From NCBI RefSeq assembly GCF_036588685.1, contig NC_086376.1, positions 8,184,001 to 8,248,000 of the forward strand: 64,000 nucleotides of DNA, given 5' to 3'. The translations under genes were made by a program, and so were the position numbers. The first letter of the stretch is position 1, and each line of letters begins with the position of its first letter. The notes under the pieces were generated by a model. That model did no database searches. It was not told the DNA's origin and worked only from the letters and a program-made list of their open reading frames with translations. This DNA is from Mytilus trossulus. Taxonomy: Eukaryota. This document shows positions 602 to 57,820 of the stretch, piece after piece.

Positions 602-3600
602 CTAAAATATAAATATAATACTCAAAATCAAGTCATAACAATTAATAAAAAATAAAATAAAAAAGAACAAGATATCAGTTCTTTTAAAAGCAAGACCACA
701 ACAACTGAAAGTAAATTTTGTCCTTTGCAGGTCAACCAACTAATAGAAACTGAACTTGAGGAAAATAAAAATCAAAATCAAATTTAGAGGTCATCTTTCA
801 AGCATGTCTTTGCTTAGATATAACCGAGTTGCAAATATCTTGCAAATAGAAAGCCTAACTTGAAATGACACAACATTCCTAAATATGTGTCAATACATAT
901 GCCATGCTTTTTTGCTTTGAAAGTTTAATATGGAAACATATTACAGCAGATTGCATTGAGTGTGTAGGTAAAAGTAAGTCTTTGGTTAGCTAGCTTGCTA
1001 GCTGAACTGTCAAGTCATTATGAAGTTAAGTAAACTCTCCTCCTTTAAGAGTAGACTAGTCTGACAGATAACCAGTCTATTTGTCTGTAGCACTAGGCTA
1101 CTTGGAAAGGAGGGTAGTATACCTTACGTATACAAGACCCTTTTTGTCTTTGCATGGGATATTATATATATCATGGAAGGACCTACCTTTCTTGACAGCC
1201 ATTTCTCATATTTTTCTCTGGCTTCTTCTTCCTGTCTTCGTTTTTCTTCATCCATATATCTCTTAGTTTGTTTCATTTTATCTTTTTCTTCTTTGGTTTT
1301 TTCCTTAATAACGTCTTCTTTTTTTTCTTTCCTGTAAAATAGGTTCATTATACATTAATTGTGTACTACTTTAATATCAAAAGCTTGCTATGACTAATGA
1401 AGAGCTAAACAAATTCATTATATTATTCAGCAATTCCTAGTTTTTTTTTATTTTTTCTTTCTTTTTATATTTTCTTTTCACAATGAAATTGGTTGATGAC
1501 AGTTACTGGTATTTTTGCATAAAATTTTAAACAATACAACCAAAGTACTTGTGTTGAATGAAAACTGAAAATCAGGCATGTAACTAGTGCTCTTCTAAAC
1601 CTGGTGTTGTTTTTTTTTATCTTGTATTCAAGTTGGGTAACATTATTGCTGTTCACAGTTTTATAAGTTACTTTGGTCTCAATTCAATAATAATCCATAA
1701 AAGTAATTAATTTGTTGAAAATTTTATAGTATTTTTTAGTTATGTATATAAATTTTATTAGATACATAAAGAACCTTGTTTTGGAAGGTTACTACTGTAG
1801 AGTGAAAAAGACAGTAAAGTACAATCTTTCTTGGTATATAATACCTACCAGACTCTGAGAGCACTTTCATTATCTTTTACTCGTTCTCTTTGTTTTCTTT
1901 TTTCTTCTTCCTCTTTTCTTCTCTCAGCTCGTTTCTTTTCTTTCTGCTGTTCAACTAACTTTTCATCATTTAATTCTTTCCATTTCTTGAATTCCTATAA
2001 AAAATAACAATTTTTACATTTAAGAAAGTATTACTAAAGGTGCATTTACTTGCTTTTTTCTTGGTATTGAATTATAATGCAATGTTTAGTATGGCAGCGA
2101 TTCACTTTTTATTTATGAAAGAAAATTTCTTGGGTATTTGGATTTTCAAGTAAATATTTTTAGGGTAGGGTGAAGGTTGGTGCCTATTAAAATGTAAATC
2201 CTGATGCATTTGTTAACACATGTCCTAAGTTGAAACCTGATGTTCAGTTGTTGTCATTTGATGATGTGGATCATAAATAAACTCATCACAGATACCCAGA
2301 CCAAATTTAGAATATACACCAAACGATCGTTTCATCTATCTACAAAGACGCTCGAATCCAAAAAAGTTAAAAAGGCTAAATAAAGTACGAAGTTGGAGAG
2401 CATTGAGGACCTAAATTCCTAAAAGTTTTGCCAAAGACAGCTAAGGTAATGTATGCCTGAGGCAGAAAAGCCTTAGTATTTCTAAAAATATCCAAAATAT
2501 AAGTTTCTCATTTCTCATTTTTTATATAGATTAGACCATTGGTTTTCCTATTTGAATGGTTTTATACTAGTCATTTTTGGGGCCTTTATAGGGTTGTCTC
2601 GTTGGCAATCATACAGTACTACATCTTCTTATATCTATCATAGGTCCTGTAAAAGCATCAATACAAAGGATTTTGTTGTCATGGACTCAGAATTATAGGT
2701 TCTGCTATATAAATGACAAGTCCCACACCTCTAGCCCCTGGCATGAATTAATTATTAACAGGGGCAATAATGAGATATGGAAATTAAAACAATAAACATA
2801 CCTTTTCTGCATCTTTCTTTTTCTTTAATTTTTCCTCTTCTTCTAATTTCTTTTTCTTTTCTTCTTTATGTTTTTCCTTCATTTTATCTTTAATGACTGG
2901 TTCTCTCTGTTCTTTCCAAGTTCTATATGCTGCCTCATTCTCTAGTTTTTTGTTTACTAAATCCTTTGAAAAATGAAAATAAATCTGTTTATGCAAATAC
3001 TTCTAATATCAAACTAAATCAACCGACTTTTATCATACCCATAGCTAGGGGGGTTTGGACGAACCTTCCCCCCTTGAAAACAAATAAGCACTGTTAAAGT
3101 CAATGTTCTGTTCGAATTGTGACTGTTAAAGTCGAGTTTGTGAGTCCAACGAACCCCCATTTGGAAATTCCTGGCTACAGGCCTGTTTATATGTACATAA
3201 TAATTTTACAACATTAACAAACAATTAATTATGTTTTTGTCTAGCTAAAAAATTAACAAGAAATAGATATACATTGTATATGCAAAGAGATTTTTTTATA
3301 TCAATTTCCAATCTATCTAACTATCACCTGTTTATTGCTAGTTTTCTTCTCAACAGATGCTCATAGCATGATCAAGACAGACAGGGGTATACTGATCATT
3401 AATATGCTGTTATCTGTTTCAATGTGCATATAAAGATTCAGAAAGGGGGTTTGCGGGGCTAAATCAAATTTTTTCCTTAATGTAGGATTTCGCATTTTTT
3501 TTTATGAATGAACTTTAAAATCATATACATAATAGACAAATAAAATAAAGAAATAGGGTCACCATCTGGTTACACTCCCAATCTGCCTTGGAAAGAAGCA

Positions 3601-15370: not shown

Positions 15371-16495
15371 CATTACATGCATTATGTAGACACTTGAAAA
15401 GTCTAACTTTTGTGATTCAAATATATTTGCATTTTGAACTTGCAAACATTGGTAATTAATTATTTGTTTAATAGAATTGAAATTACCTTTAACATAATTA
15501 AAGTTATCGATGATATAAGACAAAGTTTATAAATTGTGACTTGGATAGAGAGTCGCTCATTGGCACTCATACCCCATCTTCTCATATCTATCAGATTTCT
15601 TTATTTTTCTAAAACGTCATATTTCTCGGTTTAAAATTTATTCAAATTGATTTTAGCAATGATATAGGACTAATATTAGTCACTGCTCGGAATAGCCTAG
15701 TCTTGCTAATATATATACTGTCATACAAGTGAGAGTTTTCGCGAGGTATTAAACCAGGTTTGAAACTAGATTTAAAACCAGGTTTACTCCACCTCTTCTA
15801 TTTTAGGCAGTAAACTGGAGAATGGAAATAAGGAATGTATCAAGAGACAAATATCAGACCGAAGACTACAAAAAACAACCGAAGGCCACCAATCATGGGG
15901 TCTTCAACAGTTACACAGCGAGAAAATCCAGCACCCGGAGACGGTCTTCAGCTGGCCCCTTAACAAAAATGTAAACGGCTAGTTCAGAGAAAATGCCTGT
16001 ACCAAGTCAGGAATATATATGACAGTTGTTTTTCATTCGTTTTCAAGAAATGTCGAGCTTTTGATATTACAATTTGTTAACGGACGATCCGTTTTGAAAT
16101 TTCCTTAGAGTTCGGTACTTTTGTTATTCCAGTATGCGGTCATTTATTGAACAATCACTATAACGTTATTATAGCATATATACTTATAAGAATATCCATG
16201 ACTATAATATTTTATGACACATTTGTAAATTGAATGATGAATGCATTAACCGTTCGTTACCTTTATCGTGACAGCCATTTTGTATCGATGGAGGAAGACA
16301 ATGTCCGTTAATTAGAACCAGCGAACTTCGACAGAAAAAACTGACAATTGTAGTCAATAAATTAGATTGGAGTCAAATGCACATTGCCTTATGAGGGATT
16401 TGAACTCTCAACCTCTTTGTTGACAGGCTATTTGTTTGCCATATCAATAGCCTGTCAGCAAAAAAACAACAACAACAACAACAAAAAACAAAACC

Positions 16496-19262: not shown

Positions 19263-19508
19263 TTAAAAAAACAGGATCCAAACTTTAATACAACACATTG
19301 CCTTTTCATTTATAATACGAAAGGGCACAACCGTAACATATTGCCCAGATGGTCTTTTTACTTGTTGTTTCTGTTTATCAAAGCAATTGATCTGACGTTT
19401 AACATTACTTTATTTCAAAATCGGAGATCAAAATCTTAAAACATGTTTTGATTAGAATTTAAAAGCCTTGGCAGTAAAGTCTTCGAAATATTGTGCATAT
19501 TTTTATAA

Positions 19509-19666
19509 AATTATAATCCTCATACCTTTGATAACTATTTACACTACTCCACTGGGTCGATGCCACTGCCGGAGGACGTTTCGTCCCCGAGGGTATCACC
19601 AGCCCAGTAGTCAGCACTTCGGTGTTGACATAAATATCAATTGTATGACAATTTTTATAGGCTTTC
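19509..19666 (+). mobile_element. Retrozyme copy, 5' part (interrupted by the RT element)
   Basis: Matches 34921-35075 (CCACTGGGTCGATGCC...GTCAGCACTTCGGTGTTGAC) and resumes at 22100. Confidence 0.9.
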
Positions 19667-20190
19667 TTTTTCGCTTTGGGGATTCCGTATATCGTCAGAT
19701 TATCGGAATTCCAATGGGGACTAACTGTGCACCACTTATTGCGGACCTCTTTTTGTATTGTTACGAGTTACAATTTATGACAAAAATAAGCAAAGACCCA
19801 TCAAAACAACATCTGATAAACAAATCTAATAATACTTTTAGATATTTGGATGATATTTTGGCTCTCAATAATGACGACTTCAGTATGTATATTAATGAAA
19901 TTTATCCTGGTGAACTTACTTTAAATAAAGCTAATACTAACAATGACCACTGCCCTTTCCTCGATCTTGATATCTATATCACTAACGGAAAGCTGAATAC
20001 TAAAATTTATGATAAAAGGGATGATTTTTCATTTCCTATCGTTAATTATCCGTTTTTAGATGGTGACGTTCCCTTGTCACCATCTTACGGTGTTTATATA
20101 TCTCAACTTGTACGATTCGCTCGTGTATGTAACAATGTTTTAGATTTTAACGAGAGAAATTTATGTATTACTGAAAAATTATTACACCAG

Positions 20191-21083
20191 GGGCCGTGTC
20201 AATGAAAGTATCCTAGGATATGTCCTAAGATAGGTCTTAGGACATTATTTAGGATGGTCTTAGGACGTGTCTGAGACATGTCTTAGGATGTAAAACAAAG
20301 CTGTCTTAGGACAGTCCTAACTACGATGGTCCTAGGACCATCCTAACACATTTATTTAATTGAAAAGATATGTAGAGATTTGTAATACATAGATTAAATT
20401 GTATTTTAGAACCTATATGTAAAGAGAGGGAGGATGACTCTTATATAGAAAACAATTAACGCAAAATAAAAGTTAGTTTTTACGGAATACTAATAAATAC
20501 GTTTTCTAAATATGATAAAAGATATAAATGAATTTAATACGAAAACAAAGGTAAATGGTCACAAAAATTTGTGATATTCGTGCTGCAATTTTAGTACATA
20601 AACTAGTTTTGTCCTTAGGTCCACTCGATTTCATTACATGTATCGAATCATAATTAGGTATTAAAAAAAGAAGTAAACTTTTCCCCATATTTACATTATT
20701 TAAAATATCAGTGTTGCTTATGCTGATAGTAATGTTTAGGCTTCAAAAAAGGCACCACGAAATAATTTATTATAATACAATTTAATCTTTAACAAACATT
20801 CAACAACATTTTTTGTTATTAATTTTATCTAATGATAGTTTAATATTGTATTAGTATTTTTAGTATTGAGTTTATGCCATATTTGTTGTTTTTATTACGT
20901 TTTAGGACGATGTAACCCTTAGGACTATCCTAAGACACCTAATTGTATATCCTAACTTTAGGACCAAACTTAGGACGCATCTTATTTTAGGAGACTTTCA
21001 TTAACCCGACTTAGGACTAAGACGTGTCCTAAGACCATCCTAAGACATGTCTTAGTCCTAGGACAGCTTCGTTGACACTGGCC
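20191..21083. mobile_element. PIF/Harbinger-like MITE inserted in the RT ORF
   Basis: CAG|GGGCCGTGTCAA ... TTGACACTGGCC|CTG; dense subterminal TAGGAC/GTCCTA repeats; removal restores LLHQGFRY. Confidence 0.85.
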
Positions 21084-21486
21084 CTGGGTTTTCGATATCA
21101 CAAACTAGTCAAAACATTTACTAAATTTTATCATCGGTATAAAGACATCATTCGTAAATATAGCTCAACATGCAGACTTTTTATACGTTCAGGTATTTCA
21201 CATCCAATTTTTTATGGAAATATTCTTTATAAAGCACAAAGGTGTCAGTATTCACCTCATAAACTTACAAAACCATTGAATAGACTTATTAAGAAGGGAT
21301 ATAATTACGATACTGTTGTCAAATCATTAAAGATTGCATATTTTGCCAGAATTATACCAGAATTATAATCCTGGTACTTTTGATAACTATTGGCGTTAAT
21401 ATTGAGTCACTGATAAGGTCTTTGCGTCGGAACTAAACACATTTATTCTAAAAACAGTTGTTGGCATGACACGGGTTATGTTCTTC

Positions 21487-21553
21487 TCATATATGTTATG
21501 ATGGTATGATACTAAACCCCTTACGGGAAGGATTGTGCATGATGTTCATATGA
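21487..21553 (+). promoter_or_regulatory. Candidate type II SECIS element in the retroelement 3' UTR
   Basis: Helix 1 TCATAT/ATATGA; core ATGAT (21498)...TGAT (21540); 11-nt helix 2 GGTATGATACT/AGGATTGTGCA; AAA at 21514-21516; apical mini-stem CCC/GGG. Confidence 0.75.
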
Positions 21554-21748
21554 TGAAATCATAATCTTTCAGTCAGTTTAATTGAAGTCTGGAGCTGGCA
21601 TGTCAGTTAACTGCTAGTAGTCTGTTGTTATTTATGTATTATTGTCATTTTGTTTATTTTCTTTGGTTACATCTTCTGACATCAGACTCGGACTTCTCTT
21701 GAACTGAATTTTAATGTGCGTATTGTTATGCTTTTACTTTTCTACACT

Positions 21749-21839
21749 GGTTAGAGGTATAGGGGGAGGGTTGAGATCTCACAAACATGTTTAACCCCGC
21801 CGCATTTTTGCGCCTGTCCCAAGTCAGGAGCCTCTGGCC
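21749..21839 (+). ncRNA. Candidate conserved four-helix RNA motif (function unknown)
   Basis: P1 GGTTAGAGG/CCTCTGGCC, P2 GGGTTGAG/TTTAACCC, P3 CGCA/TGCG, P4 CCTG-TCCCAAGT-CAGG; covarying copies at 28398-28495(-) and 57907-58004(-). Confidence 0.55.
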
Positions 21840-22099
21840 TTTGTTAGTCTTGTATTATTTAAATTTTAGTTTCTTGTGTACAATTTGGAAATTAGTATGG
21901 CGTTCATTATCACTGAACTAGTATATATTTGTTTAGGAGCCAGCTGAAGGACGCCTCCGGGTGCGGGAATTTCTCGCTACATTAAAGACCTGTTGGTGAC
22001 CTTCTGCTGTTGTGTTTTTTTTTTTGTTTTTTTTTATTTTGGTCGGGTTGTTGTCTCTTTGACACATTCCCCATTCCCCATTTCCATTCTCAATTTTAT

Positions 22100-22335
22100 T
22101 TCTGTTACAAAACTTTGAATTTTTCGAAAGACTAAGGATATTCTTATCCCAGGAATAGATTGCCTAAGCCATTTTTGGCACAACCTTTTTGGAGTTTTGG
22201 GTCCTCAGTGCTCTTCGTCTTTGTACTTGCTTGGCTTTGTAGCTGTTTTGGTCTGAGCGTCACTGTTGGGTCTTATATAGACGAAACGCGCGTCTGGCGT
22301 GTTATATTATAATCCTGGTACCTCCGATAACTATT
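22100..22335 (+). mobile_element. Retrozyme copy, 3' part, with inactivated hammerhead (CTGTTGG core) and many A>G changes
   Basis: Aligns to 35075-35307; hammerhead remnant at 22257-22300. Confidence 0.9.
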
Positions 22336-23532: not shown

Positions 23533-23744
23533 GTAGACTTATTATGGATTATTGATATTTGGAAACTGCTAGAAATGCAAAACATAAATTAAAACAATAT
23601 ACATCAGACAAAATGTCTTACTTTTAATAAAGATTACATCTTAATAAACTCAACAAACACATCAATTTTTTTCTCTTCCTAACTTTTGACTATTGTATCC
23701 TAAAAGCAAATATTTTATTCAAAAAGTACATTTTAAGTTTGATT

Positions 23745-24003
23745 GTTACTAGTATCAAAGGTACCAGGATTATATAATTAATTACGCCGACGAGCATTTC
23801 GTCTACATAAGACTCATCAGTGACGCTCATATCAAAATATTTATAAAGCCGAACAAGTACAAAGTTGAAGAGCATTGATGACCCAAAATTCCCATAAGTT
23901 GTGTCGAATACGGCTACGGTTATCTATGCCTGGGGTAAAAAAAATTCCTTAGTATTTCGAATAATTAATACTTTTGCAATCATTTGATATTCATGTCAAC
24001 ACT
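23745..24003 (-). mobile_element. 5'-truncated retrozyme copy
   Basis: Reverse complement of the retrozyme 3' part, ending at the shared GGTACCTTTGATA terminus. Confidence 0.85.
23784..23826 (-). ncRNA. Minimal type I hammerhead ribozyme (core intact, stem III/I mutated)
   Basis: GCGTCA CTGATGA GTCT-TATGT-AGAC GAAA TGCTCG TC GGCGT. Confidence 0.7.
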
Positions 24004-24685: not shown

Positions 24686-25358
24686 AAGTCGGCCCCATAC
24701 CTTGACTTACATATAGAAATGACAATGAGGGTTAGATGAAAACAAAACTTTACGACAACATTGATGATTTCAGCTTCCCAATTGTGAACTTTCCATTTCT
24801 AAGCAGCAACATTCCAGCAGCAGCTGCATACTGGGTATATATCTCCCAATCGATACGATATTCCCGTGCTTTTCCTATTATGATTTTCTTGATAGAGGGT
24901 TGCTGCTTACAAGGAAGCTATTAAACAAAGAGTTCCAAATGGTAAAGTTGAAATCATCCCTTCGTAAATTTTACGGACGCCACCACCAGTTGGTTGTCCG
25001 TTATGGAAAAACCGTTTCACTAATGATATCGGGTATGTTCAGTACGTCGTAACTACAATGCCTTTCCCTTTCATGATTGTGACCTACCGAATTAGACTAT
25101 TTACCGGATTCGTTATAACATAAGCAACACGACGGGTGCCATATGTGGAGCAGGATCTGCCTACCCTTCTGAAGCACCTGAGATCACCCCTAGTTTTTGG
25201 TGGGGTTCGTGTTGCTTACTAGTATTCTTTAGTTTTATATGTTGTGTCATGTGTTCTATTGTTTGTCTGTTTGTCTTTTAGATTTTTAGCCAGACGTTGT
25301 CAGTTTGTTTTCGATTTATGAGTTTGGCTGTGCCTCTGGTATATTTCGTTTGTCTTTT
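24686..25358 (+). mobile_element. 5'-truncated Penelope-like (Naiad-type, family 2) RT element, frameshifted
   Basis: KTKLYD..DDFSFPIVNFPFLSSNIPAA.AY.VYISQ.IRYSRA; shares its 3' UTR and 3' end with the 33481, 37245 and 60396 copies. Confidence 0.85.
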
Positions 25359-25763
25359 AATCAATATTCATATAAGTTACAATTTATGATTCGCACATGT
25401 TTTTTTATGATGTCTCACCAAATACATATTGGACAACACTTTCCATGAAAGAGAGTCGGAAGATTCAAAATGATATTCAAAATTATAAGACGACAATAAA
25501 CTAACAACACCGTGATAAAAAAAAAACAGAGACGGGCTACGCATGAATTATGCTCGTTTCATTATTGAAAAGAAAAGAATGTCAAAATTGAATGTAAAAC
25601 AAAAATGAATGATTTGTTTGCCTGATTCAATCAATAAAAACTCAATCTTATACAGGTAAAGACGATGAATGACATATATTTTAAACTTTAATTTAAAATT
25701 AAAAAGACGAAGAAAATTCCAATTGTACGAATTTGCTATTTATTTATATATATTTGTATCGCT

Positions 25764-28049: not shown

Positions 28050-28667
28050 TCAATTTACTGATGCACGATAAATAAAGACAACAGTAGTATACCGCTGTTC
28101 AAAACTCATAAATCCATGGACAAAAAACAAAATCGGGGCAACAAACCAAAACCGAGGGAAACGCATTAAATATAAGAGGAGAACAACGACAAAACACCGA
28201 AACGCAACAGCACACAGAAACGGACCAAGCAACAGACAATACACCACGAGAATAACAAATATAACATCAAAACCAAATACATAAATATGGGATAGACAAG
28301 TACCATGCCACGTCTTATCTCAAAATTAAGAGAAAACAGAAACGACTCAACGTTAAAATGCAACACACACACAGAAACGAACAATATTATAACAATGACC
28401 ATCTTCCTGACTTGGTACATGACACTTTTAAAGGGGAATAAAAGTGGTGGGTTGAACCTGGTTTTAAGGCATGCCAAACCTCGCACTTTAATGGCACAAT
28501 TAAATATAACATTGAAATGAAAACAAAATATTACAGGACTACAATACAAATAAAAAGCAGAAGATATTAGACAAAGAAAAACATGATTAATAGATAACAA
28601 AAAGCATCAGGTTTAAAATTCAATACGCCAAAAACGCGTCTAGTCCACACGAGACTCACCAGTGACG
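28050..28667 (-). mobile_element. Short retroposon-like repeat with the four-helix motif, preceded on its 5' side by a degenerate hammerhead/retrozyme end (28591-28667)
   Basis: Reverse complement reads CGTCACTGGTGAGTCT...TGGCGTA...CCTGATGCTTTTTGTTATCTA, then later AACCAGGTTCAACCCACC...TGTACCAAGTCAGGAA. Confidence 0.6.
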
Positions 28668-31100: not shown

Positions 31101-31401
31101 CGTTTCGTCCCCGAGGGTATCACCAGCGCAGTAGTCAACATTTCGGTGTTCATTTTGTGGTCATTTTAAAAAGAATTCCTGTTTACAATACTTAGAATTT
31201 TTCGAAAAACTCTTATTCCAGGCATAGATAACCTTTGCAATATTTGGCGCAACTTTTTGGACTTTTGGATTCACAATGCTCTTCAACTTTGTACTTGTTT
31301 GGCTTTATAAATATTTAGATTTGAACGTCACTGATGAGTCTTATGTAGACGAAACATGGGTCAGGCGTTCTAAATTATAATCCTGATACTTTGGATAACT
31401 A
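31101..31401 (+). mobile_element. 5'-truncated retrozyme copy
   Basis: CGTTTCGTCCCCGAGGGTATCACC ... GATAACTA. Confidence 0.85.
31325..31368 (+). ncRNA. Minimal type I hammerhead ribozyme (core intact)
   Basis: ACGTCA CTGATGA GTCT-TATGT-AGAC GAAA CATGGG TC AGGCGT. Confidence 0.7.
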
Positions 31402-31907
31402 CTTCAACGTTTCATATAACTAAAAAAGACCAAAACAGTTATGATATTAGTTTCCCAAAATAAGTCATTATTCTTGACAGTAGATTTATAAACAAATTAA
31501 TGTAAGTATCTATATTGAGTATCTTCTTTTGGCCTACAGTTTTCAGTAAGAAGAAATAACTCTCCTTAAAATTTGAGAAATCTTTGCAATAATCTTCTTT
31601 ATAGATATGTTTGATAAGAAGGAGCAGAAGGATCATACCAATAATGTGGTAGAAAAGTTGTTCCGTTGTCCAAATTTTCTTCTATGATTACCCATGAATG
31701 GCGAAAGATACTAAAGTGAAACTCAGATTCATAACTGACGCCATGGCAAAAACGTAAAACGATTAACAGACAAACACAGTATACAAAGCACAACATAGAA
31801 AACTAAAGTTCTATGAACTTTCTAATTAGTAGTCATACCAACTTGCACCAGATGCAATATTCTATATCAAACGTATCTTCAGTGATGCTCGGTACCACTC
31901 ATTTATA

Positions 31908-33480: not shown

Positions 33481-33840
33481 TTGACCGTTATGGAAGAACC
33501 GTTTCACAAATGATATCGGATATGTTCCTTACGTCGTAACTACAATCCCCTTCCCTTTCATGAATTTGACCTACCAAATTAGACTATTTTCCGGATTTGT
33601 AATCACATAAGCAACACGACGGGTGCCGCATGTGGAGCAGGATCTGCTTACCCTTCCGGAGCACCTGAGATCACCCCTAGTTTTTGGTGGGGTTCGTGTT
33701 GTTTATTCTTTATTTTTCTATGTTGTGTCATGTGTACTATTATTTTTCTGTTTGTCTTTTTCATTTTTAGCCATGGCGTTGTCAGTTTGTTTTAGATTTA
33801 TGAGTTTGACTGTCCCTTTGGTATCTTTTGTCCCTCTTTT
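33481..33840 (+). mobile_element. Penelope-like family 2, 3' fragment
   Basis: Near-identical to the reverse complement of 60396-60755. Confidence 0.85.
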
Positions 33841-34876
33841 ATAGATGGAAAAATAATAGATAATACAGTTCTATGTTAAAAAACGAGCAAATAAGACGTT
33901 GTATAGCGCTTAAATAAGAAAAAAGGAATACTTGAATTCGTTTCTTTTTTCATGCGTTAACCAACCAGCAATCAATTAATTATTCGATAAAACATGACAA
34001 GAAGTAAAGATTTGAAAACAAATTTCTCAAAATCATACGACCTAATTTGTTTTATAGATGACGACGGATTTGCTTCATTTGTCGTCACCACAATTCTGTT
34101 CTATTGTCATATGATATGACATACTGAACTAAATACTTATCGCCGAGAGTGTATTTTCATGAGCATTATCCCAAGTTTTACTTTTTGTGTTGCTCTGTCT
34201 AGTTTTGAACTGATTTAAAATAAAACAAGTTACGAATAACGAATTGACAGACATGAACTAACGACAACCACTGAACTACAGGTGCTTGATATTTTTACAT
34301 TCTGACTTTGTATTAATGAAGACTTCATATGTTTTTGTTTTCAGACGTTCGAGACTATTTCCATTATGGTTCTCGGTTTACAAAGATATGACAAACATAT
34401 CCCCGTTTCTATGATATGTTATCGTTTTCTCAAATAAGAAGTCATTTAGTTAATTAAGTTTTTGAAATTTAATCGTTGACATCCACCTTGCAAATGTTAA
34501 GAATAAGTTTACAAAAATGACACCAAATAAGTACAGAATATTTCACATTCGACAGTCTTCAATTAGTGAAGACATTTTGAAACATTCAGTTTTCATGAAA
34601 AAAAGTCAACCATAACTGCAAAAGCGTGACCAAGAGGCTTGATTAGAAACCAGATACTACTTTACACATACAAGTACATAAACAGAACATGATAAAATGG
34701 GTATTAATAGATTTTTTTCTTTGAAAATTCTTATTTGAATGACAACTTGTAAGATACATATATTTCAGCTGTATACAAATGTATTCTCACCAATAAATAA
34801 TCGACATTATTTAATGCAAGGACTGACAGGTATTCATGTAGTTTATGGCTCGGAGACCCTTTTGGTAATCTATTAA

Positions 34877-35307
34877 TCACTGATGAGTCTTATGTAGACG
34901 TAACGCGCGTCTGGCATACTAAATTATAATCCTGGTACCTTTTGATAACTATTTACACCACTGGGTCGATGCCACTGCTGGTAGACGATTCGTCCCCGAG
35001 GGTATCACAAGCCCAGTAGTCAACACTTCGGTGTTGACTTGAATATCAATAATGTGGTCATTTTATAAATTTCCTGTATACAAAACTTTGAACTTTTTGA
35101 AAAACTAAGGATTTTTTTATCCCAGGCATAGTTACCTTAGCCGTATTTGGCACAACTTTATGGAATGTTGGATCCTCAATGCTCTTCAACTTTGTATTAG
35201 TTTGGCTTTATAACTATTTTGATATGAGCGTCACTGATGAGTCTTATGCAGACGAAACGCGCGTCTGGCGTACTAAATTATAATCCTGGTACCTTTTGAT
35301 TACTATT
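34877..35307 (+). mobile_element. Retrozyme, ~1.2 units (unit 354 nt), two hammerhead motifs
   Basis: CTGATGA at 34880 and 35234; the first motif has GTAA instead of GAAA, the second is intact; internal GTCAACAC-TTCG-GTGTTGAC hairpin. Confidence 0.92.
35228..35271 (+). ncRNA. Minimal type I hammerhead ribozyme, intact; predicted cleavage after C35265
   Basis: Stem I GCGTCA/TGGCGT, CTGATGA, stem II GTCT/AGAC, GAAA, palindromic stem III ACGCGCGT, GTC triplet. Confidence 0.9.
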
Positions 35308-35374
35308 GGTAGGGAAGAGGCTGCAGATCTTAAAAAGAAACTGTATTTGACAGAGCAATTGGATTCATGTCAAT

Positions 35375-35672
35375 TGTTCAATAATTTAATTTTGGATGTA
35401 ACATGTCTTCTGATTGACTGACGTTATTTTGTTATCAGCCCATATCCATAATTTAGTCGTGTGACCGTGACGTCATCAACGTTTTTTCATGGTTTTCTAC
35501 GATTAGAAATGAAATATAGAATTAAATTAAAAGAAATAGTTTTTCGGTCTATCGAAATAACATAAAAAATGTGAGCCACACTGTTAAATATCCCACTACG
35601 CGCGTTATTCAGTGTGCACCACATATTTTATGTTATTTCTTCCTAGACAGAAAAAATATTACAGTCATTCCT
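35375..35672. mobile_element. Hairpin-type non-autonomous element
   Basis: Inverted repeat GAAATAACATAAAAAATGTG...CACATATTTTATGTTATTTC around a CG-rich loop. Confidence 0.55.
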
Positions 35673-37244
35673 TGATTCAAATATTCCAATTATACTGTAT
35701 TCGGGGACTACATTTTAAAGCTATGGTATTGTTTTAATACATAAAGATAAGATTTGAAAACCCCGATCAAGTTAATCTGCCTTATATAATATTTAATACA
35801 AATTGTCGAATTTGAATTTATATCAATTTAACTTAGTATTGATGTGCTACAGTAGTTATATATACTTTGACTAGACCTGTCTTTAATTTACCTGTTCGTT
35901 ATAAAAACAAATACAACAAATAGCAACCACGATGGATAAAATATTATAATAACAAAAATAATTATAAAGAATGACAGATGTGCAAACGGTTTTATTTGAA
36001 TATTCATAACAATATTTAAAAAAAAATCCATTTGAATGCTTTGAATATCTAACGATAATTCAAACATAAGGTTTGATCGGTTTTTCTTAAATATCTTGTA
36101 ATTCTCTTTGTTTTTGAAATAGTATGAGATATGATGTAACCGTAAGTAAGAAGTGAAACACGTGACGTCATTTGATGCAAAGGATTTACTTAAAACTTGA
36201 AATAGTAAAAAAATCCAATGCTATTGGCTTTTAACGGATTCAAAGTATCAAAAAATAGGCTCCATAATCTTGTGTCTACTTAGTGTTATTTCCGCGTGGT
36301 CATAAATAAACATATCGTTCCAATTATTCTCCAAATAATTATTTGACCTATCTATAAACATTCGTAAATAGTACTGATTATTGAAGAAACTCAGCAAGCC
36401 ATTCCACGTATGGTCTTATCTTTTACTATAAAAATAAATTGTCGGCAGATAATACTAAAGACTTGATTGTACGGATTAATTACAACGTAGGGGCAGTTAC
36501 CACGTGCTATTTTCTCAAAGCTGGCCAGGACTGTATATAGAAAGCAATTTGACGATGGCAGAATACAAAATCGCTTTATAACAACTTATTGACCAAGTTT
36601 TACCTCCTACTACCAATTACTATTAAATTATTTACTTCCAATCTCTGTTATGTTTCTTAGATTCTATGAAAACAATGATTTCTATGCAGAGCACGTTGTG
36701 TTCCCACTTTTGGTCACCTTAACAAATCTTTCTTCTTGATAAAGGTATGTCTACCAGATGACATTACAAAACTGTAAGTCATAGTCTCTTATCTAGCTTG
36801 ATTGGTATTCTAGTAAAAATAGACGCAGAAGATATCAAGGTGATATTCAAATGATAATGGTTCTGTTACATATGTTTCAAATATTTTAAATTAAGTGATT
36901 GCAGTTATTTACGTACATCTACTCGGTACAAATATCAAATTAAAAAAGATGGAATATGCGTTTCAAAAAATTACGAAATTAAAACTGCATTTCGGGTATA
37001 AAACTATACTACCTACGTAATATGAATATATAAAAATGAACGAAATTAGATAGAATAATCAAAGTTAGTATGCATATATTCAGTGAGCCAGTATAACTCA
37101 TTTATCTGGCAATTGTTTCTTAAATTTGGAGAATAAAACAAAAATGTTGTGACTTGGTACAGAAATTTTCTTATGTAGAACATGGTGGTTTGAACCTGGT
37201 TTTATAGCTAGCATAACCTCTCTTTGTATAACAGTCGTGTAACA

Positions 37245-37578
37245 GACGCCATCACGAGTTGGTTAACCGTTATGAAAGTTTCACAAATGATATCGGATAG
37301 GTTCCTTAAGTTGTGACTGCAAACCTCTTTCCTTTTCACGAATGTGACCTACCGATTAAAACTCTTAACTGTTTTTGTAATAACACGAGCAACTCGACGG
37401 TTGCCACATGTGGAACAGGATCTGCTTACCCTTCTACTGGAGCACCTGAGATCACACCCAGTTTTGGGGTTCGTGATGCTAAGACTTTAATTTTCTACGT
37501 TGTGTTTTAAGTACTATTATGTGTCTGTTTTTTCTATCTATGAGTTTGACTGTCCCTCAGGTATCTTTCGCCCCTTTC
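37245..37578 (+). mobile_element. Penelope-like family 2, diverged 3' fragment
   Basis: GACGCCATCACGAGTTGG...GGATCTGCTTACCCTT...GGTATCTTTCGCCCCT. Confidence 0.8.
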
Positions 37579-38914
37579 GTATAGTTTGTTCATGATTAAA
37601 CATGACTACTAATTAACGATATTTGTATGCCATACCAACATCGCATATTTCAATGTTTTTATGCACAGCACGTCTATGGTAAAGTATTATAACCGATGTC
37701 ATCATATCCGTATTTGTTCAAGTTTTTATTTGCTTTGTTTTCACTTATTTGTTATACACAAGAATGGCAAATCAAAATACCGATCTTTTGACGTAATTCG
37801 TTTAATCACTACAAATTAGATTTAGATAAGTGTTGCTTCCGGTTATATTTTAATAGTGATTTGTAATAAAAAAAAATATACCCATACATAAGAATTTAAA
37901 AAATAATCAATTTGATAAATGATAAACCAGGATTGACAAATATTAGGATACTGAAATATCCAATATGACAGTTTACAATTGATTATATTATTTGAAATGT
38001 GCCTGTGAAATTTAGTAGATAAGGGGAGAAAAGTCATGCAGTGTATATACAAGGCAATACCAATATATCACAGGAAGCACGCTTTGATTTCTGTTTTCAT
38101 TAGGATCGTTAAGATTCATTAGCATTTATATTTGTATATAGATGAATGCAGATACAATTCGACTCAACCATGTTTATCCAGTACTTCCGTCCTGTATATG
38201 CGAATTAAGCTGAGCTGTTGTCATACAAACATCCAACTTAGATGCCATCGAGAACATCGTGTCGTCTGGAATAACAAGATGATGATCTAAATGTGTAGTA
38301 GTCAGCACATTTTCACATTGAGATTGTCATCCCAAGGACAACAATAACAATAATGCCTCGGCTCGCTTCCGTGTTCTGTTTAGTACTATTATGTCAAATT
38401 CTATTCTGAACTACATTGCAATATTTCCATGTGTGAAATAAACAGCTCGATAAAATTTACAGCAATGATAAGAGAGAGGCGAAGGATACCGAAGTGACAT
38501 TCAAACGCACACATCGAAATTAAACCAACGTTTTTGGTGGGGTTCGTGTAACTTAGTCTCTAATTTTCTATATTGTCTTTTGTGTACTATTACACTAACT
38601 ATCTACATTAAAGAAACACAAGTGGGGGACTTCTAACCAGAATTTATATGACAAACGTGAAATGTTCAACATTCTAATTGTCGACTACTCATTTATTAGC
38701 AGTAACATCCCCTATGCTCACTCTCACGTTTCTGTATACTCGTTTGATCTGTGTGTTAAGCGAGTGTGTCCTTATCTTCATTTAACCTTTTACCTGAGTC
38801 AATTTACGAGTTTTGAACATCAGTCACGTAATGTCGCCTTAATTCGCAGTGTAAAAAGTAAATCACATAAAAAATTTACTCCGAAGAAAATTCATAAGGG
38901 AAAGTCTGTAGATT

Positions 38915-39241
38915 AGTTTATTTACAGCCACCGGGTAGATGCCACTGCTGGTGGAGTTTTTATTAACCGAGGGTATCACCAGCCCAGAAGTCATCACCTC
39001 TGTGTTGGCCTGAATTATCATTGATATGGTTGTGATTAACAATTAACTGTTAACAAAACTTTGAATTTTTGAAAAACTAAGGCTTTTCTACCTCAGAAGT
39101 AGATTAAGTTAGCTGTATTTGGCAAACATTTATGATTTGTGGTCTTCAGGGCTCTTCATCGTCGTACTTTATTTGGCTTCACTATTTTTGTATTCGAGCG
39201 TCACGGTGATTCTCCCGTAGACGAAACGCGCGTCAGGGCGT
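38915..39241 (+). mobile_element. Diverged retrozyme copy with mutated hammerhead core
   Basis: GATGCCACTGCTGGTGG...GAGGGTATCACCAGCCCAG...GAGCGTCA CGGTGA ...AGACGAAACGCGCGTC. Confidence 0.8.
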
Positions 39242-42200
39242 CCCTAAAAAGGGAATAATTAAAATATCAAACACTTCAAATGAATGGACAACAAATTTCA
39301 TATTCCTGATTTCGTTCAGGCATTTTCTTACGTAGAAAAAGCAGAATACATTTTTCCGTCCGTTTGATATGATTGAATTTTGATTTTGACATTTGTTTAG
39401 TGACTTTGCGTTTTGGCGTTTTCCTGCAGTTCTGTTTTTTTCTGCTTATTATAATTTTGCTTGCTCAGGATCTACACGTTTGATTTTTGTCAAGTTTTTG
39501 TCAAACTTGTCAAACACATGGAATTCCATTTTATTTTTGGCTTGGCTCCATAAAACAACAGTTGATTGTAGGCCGTTATCTTCTAAAAGTACTTGATAAA
39601 ATCAGTTTACACATTTTCGAGTAGTAAAATTGCAGTAGCAACTCCCGAAGCAAACATTCCGCCAGACATACAAGTACATTTAAATGTGTTTATGAATATA
39701 TGGTTGTTTTTATTACGAAAAATACAATTTAAAATACTAATAAGGCCAACCCCGATAAATTTCACTTATTAAATCCTACATCTCAAATCACAGTCAACTT
39801 GAATAGTTCGGAATTAAAAGATGTCACACTTCTGTACTCAAGCTAGAAAAGACCAATTTCTTTCACAAAGAGCTGTCAGCTTAAGTACTGTTCCGAATAT
39901 ATTTTACTGTGGTCAATTTCTTAACCATGATACACAGATTGCAATATTTGCGACAACTTTGGTGGCCTTCGGCTGTTGTCCGCTCTATGATCGGGTTGTT
40001 GTCGCTTTGACACACTCCCCATTTTCTTTCTCAATTTTATTTTATTAACTAAACAAGTTTATAGTAGAGACATTGACGAAGGCTTTTTTGTGAGTAGGAG
40101 TGTCATGCATGCTGACCTAAAAGTTTAAATCAATAAAAAGTTCCTTCGAACAGTTTATTGTGAAAATTTGGCGGATTTATAAAGAATACACAATTGGATA
40201 AACATTTTGACATATTTTTACTAGGACAAAAAATTACCTAAACCCAATTATAAACAGTCCATCGCTAACATTATCATGTTTAATCGAAAGTTCTAAAATA
40301 GTTTACTGATAAAAGGAACGGGAACATTACATATATAGCTAGATTTGCCGTTTCACATGTTAGGTGCGTGAAGAAGTTCAGTGCCACGTTTTTAGTTATT
40401 TGTATTTGTATTTTTTAAAGAGTAAGTTTATGTAAATGGCAGATCAGTCTCGTGTTTATCAAACTCCGAAACAGCGGTGACGTCGCTTTGCTAAACTGGC
40501 AACGTAGCGTAGCAGAGATGACGTTACCACTGTTAATCTTTTATAATTTTATTTTGATGACATTGTGGTTGCTATCTAATTAAGTTTAACCCTTCTTCCC
40601 TTTCAATAAATAAACTCGTTTCGACAAGCAAAAGTCATATACACCATGCTTTAACTTAACAAACGAGTAAACTCTTTGGAATTTATAATTTGTTTATACC
40701 AAATAATTTTTGATCGAATATACACTCCTGTTTAGATTTTTGAAATGTATATATACGGTGTTGGTTATCTATCGCACATATAAATTGATGATTTTAATAT
40801 TCAATCACGAAATAGTCCAATCCCTAAGTTATAAACACGAAACATGTCCATTAATGAATTAATGTATCCACGTCCTTACATTTGTGGGAAATTCAATCAA
40901 TTAGCATATGAACGACGTAGACAGTAAAAAAAATGACAAAGCGTTAAAATATATTTCATTAATGAAAATTATGAATGGATGAATTTATTTCAATTTACAA
41001 ACATCTGATTAAGTTATACGTAATGTCAATGACAAATTGATTATTTTTTTGTGTTTACTTTTTCCTATTAAAACTAACCCTGATGTTGACTAATGATGCA
41101 AAATCTTCATTACATCCCGATATAAATCTGCAGATTTATAAATATAACCACCAAGAGAGTTTCATCGTTCCGCACGCTGTCTCATTTTGATAGTCTCTAT
41201 TCTTATTTCCGTTAAGTGTAATTATTCATAGTTATTACATGTGTATCCCTATTGCAAATAAAGGCTACAACTGTTTAATCAGAACGTGCCTTTTGACATC
41301 AAAAGTCAAGTTTATGTGAAAAGTAACCCACGCTGTTTGTTAATGTCTGACATGGAAGTTTTGTACATGTTACATGGGAGCTAAGACATGCATTTGATAT
41401 GTAGGTACTGTGAGATGATTGATAAAATTATACTATGTCAGTACTTTAAGGATGCTAATTATCATTCGAACAATTTCCTACATTAAACATTAATGGAAAT
41501 TTGTCTCTTTTTATACGTTAAACGGTTTCAACATGCCATTCCACGAATCATTACCTAAGATTTAACTCATTAGCATTTTTGGGCCAAATATAGCAATGGC
41601 TAAAATAAAAAGTTAAAAAAGAAGTCTTCAATTAAAATTCAATCATAAAAATTGTGATTTTTGTTGAATAAACAACAATATTTACTTTCTTCGAATTACG
41701 TTGTAAACAATGTAGCATATTATTCGACCATCCTCAAATCAACATTAAATTTGGCACTTTACATATAATGTATACAGTCTAAATAAAGCATCATCAACTT
41801 ATTTTGATTTTGAACGAGAAAGGTAACCCAGGTGCAGAGGACCAGCTTCGTGATCAATGAATGAACTAACTTCACATTACGAATTGTCCCCCTTTAAGCT
41901 GCTTATAGAATCCGTTGAAATGTCAAAAAACAGAACAAAACTATTTTTATTTACCTGTGAACGTTGTTTTGTTTCGCGGCATTTTGTGCAAGTTTATGGT
42001 TGTCTTTCTGATAGTGTTTACATCTAACCTCCTTAATTACATAATTTTGTATTTACATTTTGTCATAAATCACATTTATTCGTTCAGGGTATATTTTATT
42101 TGTTGAGTCTTGTCCCATTAACACGTTTTTCTATATGTGCCCTGATGAAATGCCTGTGCCAATTAAGGAATATGTCAGTTGTTTTCCATTCGTTTGATAT

Positions 42201-42726
42201 GTTTGAGCTTTTGATTACGGGCTTTCCATTTTGAATTTCCCTCGGCGTTCGTTATTTTTGTTAATTTTCTTTTTGTGAACTAAATAAAACAATACAGAAA
42301 AGGCCAACTACACTCAAATTGTTTAGCATTGGACGAAAGCTCGTTCAACGACCAAAACCGGTCAGACATTCTTTCTGGTGCAAATCAGTATCGTTACCAG
42401 GGCTATACGTTATCGGTGCGAAGTGCTTATCTTTTTCTTCATAGTTCTGCTTTCTTCGGAGATATTCTGGACGTAGCTTTGATCTCAAATATTATGTTAT
42501 TGATTGATACTACTCAAGACTCGTAGAGATTTTAACTTTTTTGTGACCACTTTGCTGATTCTAATTTGACATGACGAGATAGTTTACTAAACACTTTGCC
42601 AATTCTGGTTTTATAAGCAAAAAACTTACAAACTCTGAGCTCATTCTTGTTTTAATAAGCCAAGATGAAAAACATAATCTCTTTGCTCATTAAACATAAA
42701 CTCTTTGCTTATTTTATTTTACAGCA

Positions 42727-57401: not shown

Positions 57402-57820
57402 TATAGTTATCAAAGGTACCAGGATTATAATTTAATACGCCAGACGCACGTTTCGTCTACATAAGACTCATCAGTGACGCTCAGATCAAAATAGTTGTAA
57501 AGCCAAATAAATACAAAGTTGAAGAGCATTGAAGACCCAAAATTCCAAAAAAGTTGTGACAAATACGACTAAAGTAATCTATTCCTGGGATAAGAAAATC
57601 CGTTTTTCCAAAAAATCAAAGTTTTGTAACAGGAAATTTAAATAAATTACCACATAATTAATTTTCATGTCAACATCGAAGTGCTGACTACTGGGCTGGT
57701 GATACCCTCGTGGACGAAACGTCCACCAGCAGTGGCATCGACCCATTGGTGTAAATAGTTATCAAAGGTACCAGGATTATAATTTAATACGCCAGACGCG
57801 CGTTTCGTCTACACAAGACT
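57402..57820 (-). mobile_element. Retrozyme, ~1.2 units (unit 352 nt), inserted into another repeat with ACTGAA target duplication
   Basis: TTTCGTCT at 57451 and 57803; ACTGAA at 57396-57401 and 57818-57823. Confidence 0.92.
57437..57480 (-). ncRNA. Minimal type I hammerhead ribozyme, intact core
   Basis: GCGTCA CTGATGA GTCT-TATGT-AGAC GAAA CGTGCG TC TGGCGT. Confidence 0.88.

What the first reader, a model, noticed from the sequence alone, without database searches (positions are those of the whole stretch)
34877..35307. Hammerhead retrozymes: longer-than-unit copies with a fixed 3' end suggest reverse transcription of a circular RNA
Seen: a ~350-nt repeat with a minimal type I hammerhead (palindromic stem III ACGCGCGU, suited to dimeric folding) occurs about ten times. 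Copies 34877-35307 (354+~76 nt), 57402-57820 (352+~66) and 61880-62265 (349+~36) exceed one unit. The 3' ends coincide at GGTACCTTTGATAACTA, ~35 nt downstream of the GUC cleavage site (also at 21390, 22333, 23745, 28591, 31401), while the 5' ends vary. Known: non-LTR retrozymes of metazoans, including mussels, self-cleave into monomers that circularise. Inference: cDNA synthesis starts at one defined site that is not the ribozyme cut and runs past the ligation junction, i.e. rolling-circle reverse transcription of a circRNA (or of a multimer) by a borrowed RT.
Basis: partly seen in the sequence, partly recalled or inferred. Interest (0 to 1): 0.82.

Follow-up and report, generated by a model that had tools for sequence, protein, structure and literature searches.

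The report
Mussel hammerhead retrozyme: fixed-end retro-insertions
These repeats are copies of an already published mussel "retrozyme", a non-coding mobile element with a self-cutting RNA motif. Thousands of copies end at exactly the same base but start at variable points, which fits the published idea that its circular RNA is copied back into DNA.

Summary
The window carries about nine insertions of a 354-356-nt repeat with one type I hammerhead per unit. Seven or eight end at the same base (...TGGTACCTTTGATAACTATT), 41 nt past the GUC cut site. Their 5' ends vary, and four exceed one unit.

Genome-wide, about 3,570 of roughly 6,700 perfectly conserved 25-nt tails are followed by non-repeat DNA. 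In a positional sample, insert lengths ran from 30 to 1,341 nt.

One window copy sits in a Penelope-like element tail whose uninterrupted form is known, which gives a 5-bp target duplication.

Units within an array share one family haplotype and differ only by private changes. Unit junctions at the cut site show no indels or extra bases. So each insertion was copied from one continuous multi-unit or circular template, starting at a fixed internal site.

None of this separates a circle from an uncleaved multimer.

The family is the published Mytilus retrozyme, a sister subfamily of clone Mg353. The mechanism is that paper's own tentative model.

I could not identify the reverse transcriptase. 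Five Penelope-like 3' ends do not share the tail. A ribozyme-less repeat does share the TGGTAYCTTT box 10 nt from its end.

Other windows of this genome gave the scan similar findings before.

The parts
34877..35307 (+). 1.22-unit retrozyme insertion. 34877-34953 is the last 77 nt of a unit, with a truncated and mutated hammerhead. 34954-35307 is a full unit.
   Evidence: the two overlapping 77-nt parts are 94.8% identical
35228..35271 (+). Type I hammerhead ribozyme motif with an intact core. The predicted cut lies between 35265 and 35266.
   Evidence: Rfam RF00163 33.0 bits, E 2.2e-6 on the 601-nt scan, gathering 34
35287..35307 (+). 3' terminal module: the TGGTACCTTT box, then 10-11 nt, then the end of the element.
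   Evidence: The same box sits at the same distance from the end in a second repeat family.
57403..57820 (-). 1.18-unit retrozyme insertion inside the 3' tail of a Naiad-type Penelope-like element. TTCAG is duplicated at about 57819-57823 and 57397-57401. The 5' edge is ambiguous by 2 nt.
   Evidence: The uninterrupted target is seen in four other copies of that element.
57437..57480 (-). Hammerhead motif of that copy.
   Evidence: RF00163 30.3 bits
61880..62265 (+). About 1.1-unit copy of a diverged subfamily. It begins 6-9 nt upstream of the cut site and ends at the homologous tail position (TGGTACCGTT then 7-10 nt).
19508..19641 (+). 5' half of an old 1.09-unit copy (last 33 nt of a unit plus r1-97), interrupted by a Penelope-like element.
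22099..22335 (+). 3' half of the same copy (r118-354), ending at the common 3' end. Its hammerhead is decayed.
23744..23976 (-). 5'-truncated copy of 233 nt ending at the common 3' end.
31101..31404 (+). 5'-truncated copy of 304 nt ending at the common 3' end.
2275..2487 (-). 5'-truncated, decayed copy of the sister subfamily (the one published as Mg353). It ends at the homologous point (...GAGTTTATTT).
38919..39200 (+). Sister-subfamily copy starting near the unit boundary. The 3' part beyond the cut site is diverged or lost.

Best explanation
The repeat is a subfamily of the known mussel non-LTR retrozyme. It is a non-coding unit of about 356 nt, 39% G+C, with one type I hammerhead.

**How new copies are made (inferred).**
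- New genomic copies arise by target-primed reverse transcription.
- cDNA synthesis starts at one fixed internal site of the RNA. That site is 41 nt downstream of the ribozyme cut and 10 nt after a conserved UGGUAYCUUU box. The RNA's terminal UU often pairs with a TT-starting target.
- Synthesis then runs a variable distance along one continuous template. In most events it stops within one unit, giving a 5'-truncated copy that is dead on arrival.
- In roughly a quarter of events it passes the cut/ligation site and the start point again, giving 1.1-unit to many-unit arrays. Only inserts of about 1.25 units or more carry two complete hammerheads, so only those could release a new monomer.

**Shown versus inferred.**
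- Shown: the fixed 3' end, the variable 5' end, single-event insertion of a >1-unit copy with a short target duplication, one template haplotype per array, and abundant sense-strand RNA that runs uninterrupted across the cut site.
- Inferred: that the template is most probably the circular monomer that dominates mussel retrozyme RNA, and that the enzyme comes from an autonomous retroelement.
For: **Fixed 3' end.**
- Every array in three samples ends at ...GATAACTA(TT).
- The perfect 25-nt tail is followed by A 1,558 times, by C or G 1,090 times, and by T plus non-A 924 times. It is followed by the next unit 3,117 times. Reversed-pattern controls give 0.
- The tail 22-mer with up to 2 mismatches occurs 37,878 times.

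**Variable 5' end.** 46 mapped insertions start all over the unit. In the positional sample (27 usable insertions) lengths run 30-1,341 nt, 6 exceed one unit and 3 reach 443 nt or more.

**Single-event insertion.** The copy at 57403-57820 interrupts a Penelope-like tail whose intact form is seen in four other copies, giving a TTCAG duplication. Junction repeats of 5 nt or more occur in 25.5% of 47 insertions, against 9.7% (sd 3.6%) for permuted flank pairs. Most begin with TT overlapping the element end.

**One template per array.**
- At 14 common family-polymorphic columns, units of one array differ at 0.58 sites, against 5.38 between arrays. At the other columns the figures are 7.4 and 9.3.
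- A 26-unit array has 26 identical units.
- The 5' partial unit is closer to its neighbouring unit than to the mean of other loci in 17 of 19 cases.

**Cut-site junctions.** 36 of 44 units keep GTC|TGG. All 26 units of that array are identical, so its junctions carry no scars.

**RNA.** Depth is about 1,000-1,700 in two raw RNA runs and zero in the flanks. Sense reads outnumber antisense 4-6 fold. No pile-up of ends appears at 35265|35266.

**Literature.** Mussel retrozyme RNA is mostly circular, the hammerhead self-cleaves, and RtcB circularises the monomer (PMC7229834).
Against: - No autonomous element with the same 3' end was found among five Penelope-like families examined.
- Target duplications are detectable in only about a quarter of insertions.
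- Short reads cannot show circularity.
- The 354-nt monomer does not fold better than shuffles (z -0.4).
- Very large arrays exist, and one shows a three-unit periodic variant. So DNA-level amplification also shapes arrays.
- The genome samples are small, and two of the three were chosen through conserved copies.
- A perfectly identical 26-unit array could owe something to assembly polishing.
Confidence: 0.55

Rival explanations
1. The template is a linear, uncleaved multimeric transcript of an existing genomic array. The same RT copies it from the same internal site, and no circle is involved.
For: - This hammerhead cleaves slowly (kobs about 0.1 per min, PMC7229834), so uncleaved multimers must exist.
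- Arrays of 2 to more than 100 units are available as sources.
- A homogeneous parent array would also give one haplotype per daughter array.
- RNA reads cross the cut site without a break.
Against: - With pervasive 5' truncation (most inserts are under one unit), array length could only shrink from one generation to the next.
- A 26-unit daughter needs a parent of at least 26 units.
- Published northern blots show mainly circles and few longer linear forms.
Confidence: 0.2
2. This is Penelope-type pseudo-LTR formation. The RT reaches the 5' end of one cleaved linear monomer and jumps to the 3' end of another RNA molecule, joining separate molecules head to tail.
For: - Partial tandems are the standard product of Penelope-like elements and their non-autonomous relatives (PMC8557442).
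- Five of 46 insertions, plus the subfamily copy at 61880, begin 0-9 nt upstream of the cut site (binomial p 0.014, window chosen after seeing the data).
Against: - A cleaved monomer offers only 41 nt between the start site and its 5' end, yet no excess of 41-nt copies is seen.
- Internal cut-site junctions show no added or missing bases.
- Units of one array share one haplotype although the RNA pool is mixed: several sites read about 50:50 in RNA reads.
Confidence: 0.08
3. Copies went in at one unit or less, and the extra length arose later in the DNA by tandem duplication, slippage or unequal crossing-over.
For: A roughly 38-kb array at G000:C1:269,604-307,902 carries a variant tail spaced by multiples of about 355 nt, three units in several cases. 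This points to DNA-level amplification. Identical units are also what recent duplication gives.
Against: - Short >1-unit copies (1.1-1.5 units) keep the canonical 3' end and have an arbitrary 5' start, with the target duplication outside the whole block.
- Duplication of an insert shorter than one unit cannot create the missing part of the unit.
- Lengths in the positional sample show no gap at one unit.
Confidence: 0.1
4. These are not retro-insertions. They are fragments of a satellite, or cargo of a DNA transposon or Helitron-type element with one fixed end.
For: Bivalve satellites are often carried by such elements (general knowledge, not tested here). There is no poly(A) tail.
Against: - Flanks of different copies are unrelated.
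- Thousands of dispersed copies share one end and are truncated only at the other.
- There are short AT-rich target duplications and a TT overlap at the 3' junction.
- Sense-strand RNA is abundant.
Confidence: 0.03

Closest known systems
Mytilus galloprovincialis non-LTR retrozyme (Cervera and de la Pena 2020, clone Mg353, hammerhead families A and B)
   Same: - The hammerhead is the same (GAGCGTCACTGATGAGTCTT.TGTAGACGAAACGCGCGTC|TGGCGT), apart from loop 2.
- The body shares blocks such as CCACTGGGTCGATGCCACTGCTGGTGGA and GAGGGTATCACCAGCCCAGTAGTCA.
- Unit size is 350-390 nt, G+C is low, and RNA is abundant.
   Different: - The tail after the cut site differs: ...AATCCTGGTACCTTTGATAACTATT here, ...AGTCCTGGTATCTATGATGAGTTTATT in the clone.
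- The main text, discussion and held supplement of that paper mention tandem repeats and occasional target duplications. They do not mention a fixed 3' end or 5' truncation.
- Copy number in this assembly (tens of thousands of tails) is far above the roughly 5,000 motifs reported from the 2016 draft.
Non-autonomous elements of Penelope-like retrotransposons (pseudo-LTR-forming, e.g. MRC1 of Chlamydomonas; vertebrate retrozymes related to PLE pseudo-LTRs, bioRxiv 10.64898/2026.07.22.740005)
   Same: Fixed 3' end, heavy 5' truncation, head-to-tail partial tandems and multi-copy insertions, no poly(A), and co-occurrence with many intact Penelope-like elements in the genome.
   Different: Those elements share their 3' ends with an autonomous family. 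Here none of five Penelope-like 3' ends examined matches, and no adjacent inverted copy was seen.
SINE/LINE partnerships with a shared 3' tail (stringent-type LINEs, R2-type precise internal initiation)
   Same: A short conserved 3' module at a fixed distance from the end. A second, unrelated non-coding family in the same genome carries the same module.
   Different: No tRNA-, 5S- or 7SL-derived head was found (Rfam scan). There is no terminal microsatellite or poly(A), and the template can be longer than the unit.
Plant LTR retrozymes
   Same: Hammerhead-bounded unit, circular RNA intermediate, non-autonomous.
   Different: Plant elements have type III hammerheads, LTRs, a primer-binding site, a polypurine tract and 4-bp duplications, and they are mobilised by Gypsy elements. 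None of that is present here.

Membership tests
Metazoan non-LTR retrozyme | One canonical type I hammerhead per unit, with an intact catalytic core | tested here: met
   RF00163 scores 33.0 and 30.3 bits for the two intact window copies, just under gathering 34. CUGAUGAG...GAAAC is intact in 41 of 44 sampled genomic units.
Metazoan non-LTR retrozyme | Short head-to-tail units of 150-450 bp, from dimers to large multimers | tested here: met
   The unit is 354-356 nt. Arrays range from 1.1 to 26 units, and one spans about 38 kb.
Metazoan non-LTR retrozyme | Low G+C, no coding capacity, no LTR, PBS or PPT | tested here: met
   G+C is 38.8%. The longest open frame in a trimer is 86 codons. No terminal repeats occur beyond the unit itself.
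Metazoan non-LTR retrozyme | Sequence homology to the published mussel retrozyme | tested here: met
   The hammerhead and several body blocks are shared with clone Mg353 and the cloned circRNA consensus, read from the paper's supplement. This was compared by eye, not by a computed alignment.
Metazoan non-LTR retrozyme | Expressed as a monomeric circular RNA | tested here: inconclusive
   Sense RNA is abundant, continuous across the cut site, and shows no pile-up of ends. Short reads cannot show circularity. Circles are shown for the sister subfamily in PMC7229834.
Metazoan non-LTR retrozyme | Self-cleavage of the hammerhead | not testable with these tools
   Shown in vitro for Mg353, whose hammerhead differs only in loop 2.
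Penelope-like-element-mobilised non-autonomous element | Fixed 3' end, 5' truncation, partial head-to-tail tandems | tested here: met
Penelope-like-element-mobilised non-autonomous element | 3' end shared with an autonomous Penelope-like family of the same genome | tested here: not met
   Five 3' ends do not match: the Naiad-type 965/1056-aa family, the window element (...CCATTCTCAATTTTA), the 911-aa and 901-aa C-terminal-endonuclease families ending at (TA)n, and the L051 family.
Penelope-like-element-mobilised non-autonomous element | Adjacent inverted 5'-truncated copy or a 30-40-bp tail extension | not tested
   Not looked for systematically. None was noticed in about 55 junction pairs.
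SINE | Head derived from tRNA, 5S or 7SL with an internal pol III promoter | tested here: not met
   The permissive Rfam scan of 34800-35400 gives only hammerhead matches and two chance-level hits (E above 6) to unrelated families.

The most novel reading that the evidence does not exclude
The retrozyme circle is copied by target-primed reverse transcription that needs no RNA 3' end. The enzyme recognises a UGGUAYCUUU box and starts exactly 10 nt downstream of it on a closed circle. A ribozyme-less repeat family that carries the same box uses the same enzyme. The box would then be a portable 'start here' signal, and it identifies the still unknown autonomous partner.
Probability: 0.3. Interest if true: 0.6.

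Novelty: already known. Interest (0 to 1): 0.38.

Why it matters
How animal retrozymes move is still a hypothesis in the literature. This genome gives the model a concrete footprint:
- a single-base-precise start site for cDNA synthesis that is not the ribozyme cut;
- short TT-starting target duplications;
- one template haplotype per array;
- a conserved 10-nt box at a fixed distance from the end, shared with an unrelated non-coding repeat.

These features make the model testable. One can scan autonomous elements for the box, test circular against linear RNA in vitro, and mutate the box. They also explain why most genomic copies are dead: they hold fewer than two complete ribozymes. None of this changes what the element is, and other windows of the same genome yielded similar findings earlier in this scan.

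Tried and rejected
1. **A false 5'-end peak.** The first genome search showed an apparent peak of 5' ends at unit position about 305. The tool scores only about 50 nt beyond each candidate. A fresh BLAST on the fetched loci moved those ends to positions 170-265.

2. **Tail sharing with a Naiad-type Penelope-like element.** A 27-30-nt match to the retrozyme tail lies in that family's 3' UTR and at the end of the window element's reading frame. It sits about 416 nt upstream of the true 3' end of the Naiad family. It is absent from the two neighbouring copies of the UTR's internal repeat. I read it as a severely 5'-truncated retrozyme mini-insertion; 30-32-nt insertions are common.

3. **A match to the 911-aa Penelope-like element.** Its terminal 20-mer resembles an internal retrozyme segment at 16 of 20 positions. 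Local alignment of the whole 3' UTR scores no better than shuffles, so I treat it as chance.

4. **A genome-wide coverage 'sawtooth' from k-mer counts.** I abandoned it because the hammerhead k-mer is shared with sister subfamilies: 46,043 hits against 37,878 for the tail.

5. **A chimeric retrozyme-PLE-retrozyme cDNA at 19508-22335.** I rejected this in favour of a nested insertion, because the two retrozyme pieces end and resume only 20 nt apart in the unit.

6. **A rod-like fold of the monomer.** Not supported (z -0.4).

7. **More genome loci.** I did not try to read further sequence by other means.

8. **The large protein search.** No protein here was left unexplained.

Full report
**What is in the window**

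BLAST of the 354-nt unit against the window gives 15 pieces. Read with their flanks, they make about nine insertions.

I number the unit r1-r354 as window 34954-35307, so that r354 is the shared end. On that numbering:
- 34877-35307 is r278-354 plus a full unit.
- 57403-57820 (- strand) is r287-354 plus a full unit.
- 22099-22335, 23744-23976 (- strand) and 31101-31404 are 5'-truncated copies that all stop at r354.
- 61880-62265 is a diverged subfamily copy. Its ends are repeated over 38-40 nt at 38/40 identity, and it stops at the homologous tail position.
- 2275-2487 (- strand) and 38919-39200 belong to the sister subfamily.
- 19508-19641 (r322-354 plus r1-97) and 22099-22335 (r118-354) are two halves of one 1.09-unit copy. 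A 2.46-kb 5'-truncated Penelope-like element splits them. Its reverse-transcriptase fragment is the open frame 19468-20205, which carries GIPMG and YLDD motifs. Pfam at E <= 0.01 gave no hit for this frame.

Nothing is present at 28591. The stretch 21361-21391 is only a 30-nt tail-like piece inside that Penelope-like element.

**The ribozyme**

At Rfam's gathering threshold the window has no hit. A permissive scan finds Hammerhead_1 at 35228-35271 (33.0 bits against a gathering score of 34, E 2e-6 locally) and at 57437-57480 (30.3 bits). It also finds three weaker, decayed motifs.

Stem III, ACGCGCGU, is the consensus of the Rfam type I model itself.

In the diverged copy at 62210-62250 stem III reads AUGCGCAU. 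It is still a palindrome, reached through a C-G to U-A change on both sides. Stem I changes one G-C pair to A-U (read directly).

The upstream partial motifs of the two main longer-than-unit copies are incomplete. 34877 starts inside stem I and has GUAA in place of GAAA. 57820 starts after the CUGAUGA box. Neither locus could release a monomer.

**Identity**

The supplement of Cervera and de la Pena 2020 (PMC7229834) prints the cloned M. galloprovincialis genomic retrozyme and the consensus of the cloned circular RNAs. The hammerhead is the same apart from loop 2, and long body blocks are shared. The 41 nt after the cut site differ.

So this is a sister subfamily of a published element. RNA reads that hang off the window copy carry the published tail (TATACAAAATTTAGTCCTGGTATCTATGAT). 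Both subfamilies are therefore expressed.

**The 3' end, genome-wide**

The window lies in a 1.30-Gb assembly with 14 large sequences. All 40 best-scoring arrays end at ...GATAACTA or ...GATAACTATT, whatever their number of units.

Exact pattern counts are whole-genome, and the reversed-pattern control gives 0. For the perfect 25-nt tail:

| Followed by | Count |
|---|---|
| A | 1,558 |
| C or G | 1,090 |
| T then a non-A base | 924 |
| The start of the next unit (TACAC) | 3,117 |

So about half of the perfectly conserved tails are true ends. They are dispersed along the chromosomes. This is an upper bound, because some variant internal junctions are included.

The 22-nt tail with up to two mismatches occurs 37,878 times. 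In the consensus the end lies 41 nt after GUC|.

**The 5' end**

The first search suggested a sharp peak of 5' ends about 50 nt before the end. That was an artefact of the tool's scoring window.

The sample taken in genome order, conditioned only on a perfect tail, gives 27 usable insertions:
- lengths range from 30 to 1,341 nt;
- 21 are shorter than a unit;
- 6 are longer than a unit;
- 3 are long enough (443 nt or more) to hold two complete hammerheads.

Over all 46 mapped insertions the starts are spread across the unit. Five fall 0-7 nt upstream of the cut site (binomial p 0.014, window chosen after seeing the data). The subfamily copy at 61880 does the same. This may reflect stalling in the GC-rich stem III and needs a larger sample.

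**Single-event insertion and target sites**

The copy at 57403-57820 lies in the last 300 nt of a Naiad-type Penelope-like element (57375-58105, - strand). Four other copies of that element show the uninterrupted sequence ...GAGTTCAGTATTTTTG.... The insertion is flanked by TTCAG on both sides, so the 1.18-unit block went in as one piece.

Across 47 insertions, junction repeats of 5 nt or more occur in 25.5%, against 9.7% (sd 3.6%, maximum 22%) for permuted flank pairs. The clear ones are TTAACTAA, TTATATA, TTAAAT, TTAGTT and TTTAA. They start with the TT that also ends the element. That pattern is what annealing of the RNA end to the nicked target would give.

**One template per array**

A 26-unit array at C14:37,002,637-37,011,940 has 26 identical units plus a 48-nt partial unit.

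In nine other arrays I compared differences between units at two classes of alignment column:

| Columns compared | Within one array | Between arrays |
|---|---|---|
| 14 common family-polymorphic columns | 0.58 | 5.38 |
| All other columns | 7.4 | 9.3 |

The units of an array therefore began as copies of one sequence and then mutated in place.

The 5' partial unit is closer to its neighbouring unit than to the mean of other loci in 17 of 19 cases.

Internal cut-site junctions show no added or missing bases.

The RNA pool is mixed: several sites read about 50:50 in RNA reads. Joining of separate RNA molecules therefore looks unlikely.

**RNA**

Two raw RNA-seq runs labelled with the same species as the best DNA holder cover the unit at about 1,000-1,700 fold, from only 6% of each run. 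Sense reads outnumber antisense 4-6 fold, taking the usual convention for stranded libraries. Depth in the unique flanks is zero.

No excess of molecule ends appears at the cut site. Most RNA is therefore uncleaved or religated, which agrees with the published predominance of circles. Short reads cannot prove circularity.

**What this does and does not show**

The data fit target-primed reverse transcription that starts at a fixed internal site and runs along one continuous template holding more than one unit. A cleaved linear monomer would allow only 41 nt of cDNA, so it is not the main template.

A circle and an uncleaved multimer predict the same DNA. I favour the circle for two reasons:
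- truncation would otherwise shorten arrays with every generation;
- circles dominate the RNA.

Partial tandems are also the usual product of Penelope-like elements (PMC8557442). The longer-than-unit copies alone are therefore not diagnostic. Giant arrays with a periodic variant show that DNA-level amplification also happens.

**The partner**

The genome holds hundreds of GIY-YIG-bearing Penelope-like copies, many with intact frames of 900-1,056 codons. I examined the 3' ends of five families. None shares the retrozyme tail.

The 27-30-nt tail-like pieces inside two of them are best read as mini-insertions.

A lead came from an earlier first-reader note of this scan (s1-823717). I checked it on my own data, and part of it holds. 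A second, ribozyme-less repeat of about 450 nt ends in TGGTATCTTT plus 10 nt. It occurs at window 24903-25359, 33481-33843, 37263-37584 and 60391-60845 (- strand), and in many fetched loci. The box sits at exactly the same distance from the end as TGGTACCTTT in the retrozyme.

I did not find the box at the end of any autonomous element.

**Standing**

The element and the proposed mechanism are published. A 2026 preprint ties vertebrate retrozymes to Penelope-like pseudo-LTRs but did not look at invertebrates.

Earlier follow-ups of this scan reached similar conclusions on other windows of the same genome.

What this window adds is a quantified footprint, not a new kind of element.

Noticed in passing
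window 24903-25359 (+), 33481-33843 (+), 37263-37584 (+), 60391-60845 (-); also L001, L028, L031, L073, L077, L079, L090, L099: A second abundant non-coding repeat of about 450 nt, with a fixed 3' end and variable 5' truncation. It has no tRNA and no Rfam match. It ends ...TGGTATCTTT plus CGTCCCTCTT, so it carries the same 10-nt box at the same distance from the end as the retrozyme. The two may share a mobilising enzyme.
   Followed up: partly
L031 around 600-640 and L077 around the tail junction: Two tail-to-tail junctions: a retrozyme 3' end abuts the 3' end of an inverted, very short copy of the second repeat family. This suggests repeated use of the same target site in both orientations.
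   Followed up: no
window 19642-22098 (+): A 5'-truncated Penelope-like element nested in an old retrozyme copy. It has an RT fragment with GIPMG and YLDD motifs in frame 19468-20205 and ends ...CCATTTCCATTCTCAATTTTA. Its last open frame (21072-21368) stops inside a 30-nt retrozyme-tail-like segment. An unrelated element in L073 carries the same 23-nt terminal motif and directly abuts another retrozyme copy.
   Followed up: partly
window 57375-58105 (-), and fragments at 15989-16128, 17381-17623, 28400-28492, 37150-37236, 39257-39339, 42148-42274: Many short 3'-terminal fragments of a Naiad-type Penelope-like element (N-terminal GIY-YIG, 965-1,056-codon frames elsewhere in the genome). Its 3' UTR holds about 270-nt internal tandem repeats.
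   Followed up: partly
G000:C14:37,002,637-37,011,940 (L003-L028): A 26-unit retrozyme array in which all 26 units are 100% identical. It starts 7 nt upstream of the cut site and ends at the canonical tail. It is either a very young insertion or partly an effect of assembly polishing.
   Followed up: partly
G000:C1:269,604-307,902: A roughly 38-kb retrozyme array in which a variant tail (...ACTATTC) recurs at multiples of about 355 nt, in several cases three units. This is a higher-order pattern pointing to DNA-level amplification. It is inferred from pattern-hit coordinates only.
   Followed up: no
5' ends of A26, L031, L034, L082, L084 and window 61880: Insertion 5' ends cluster 0-9 nt upstream of the hammerhead cut site, inside stem III: 5 of 46, binomial p 0.014, with the window chosen after seeing the data. 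This could be RT stalling in the GC-rich helix.
   Followed up: partly
window 35375-35500: The stretch just downstream of the retrozyme copy is itself covered several hundred fold in the RNA runs, with the opposite strand bias. It is another expressed repeat and was not identified.
   Followed up: no
Genome search output: In DNA mode the tool scores only about 50 nt beyond each candidate. Partial units next to a full match are therefore reported as about 49-nt pieces, which produced a spurious peak of 5' ends.
   Followed up: yes
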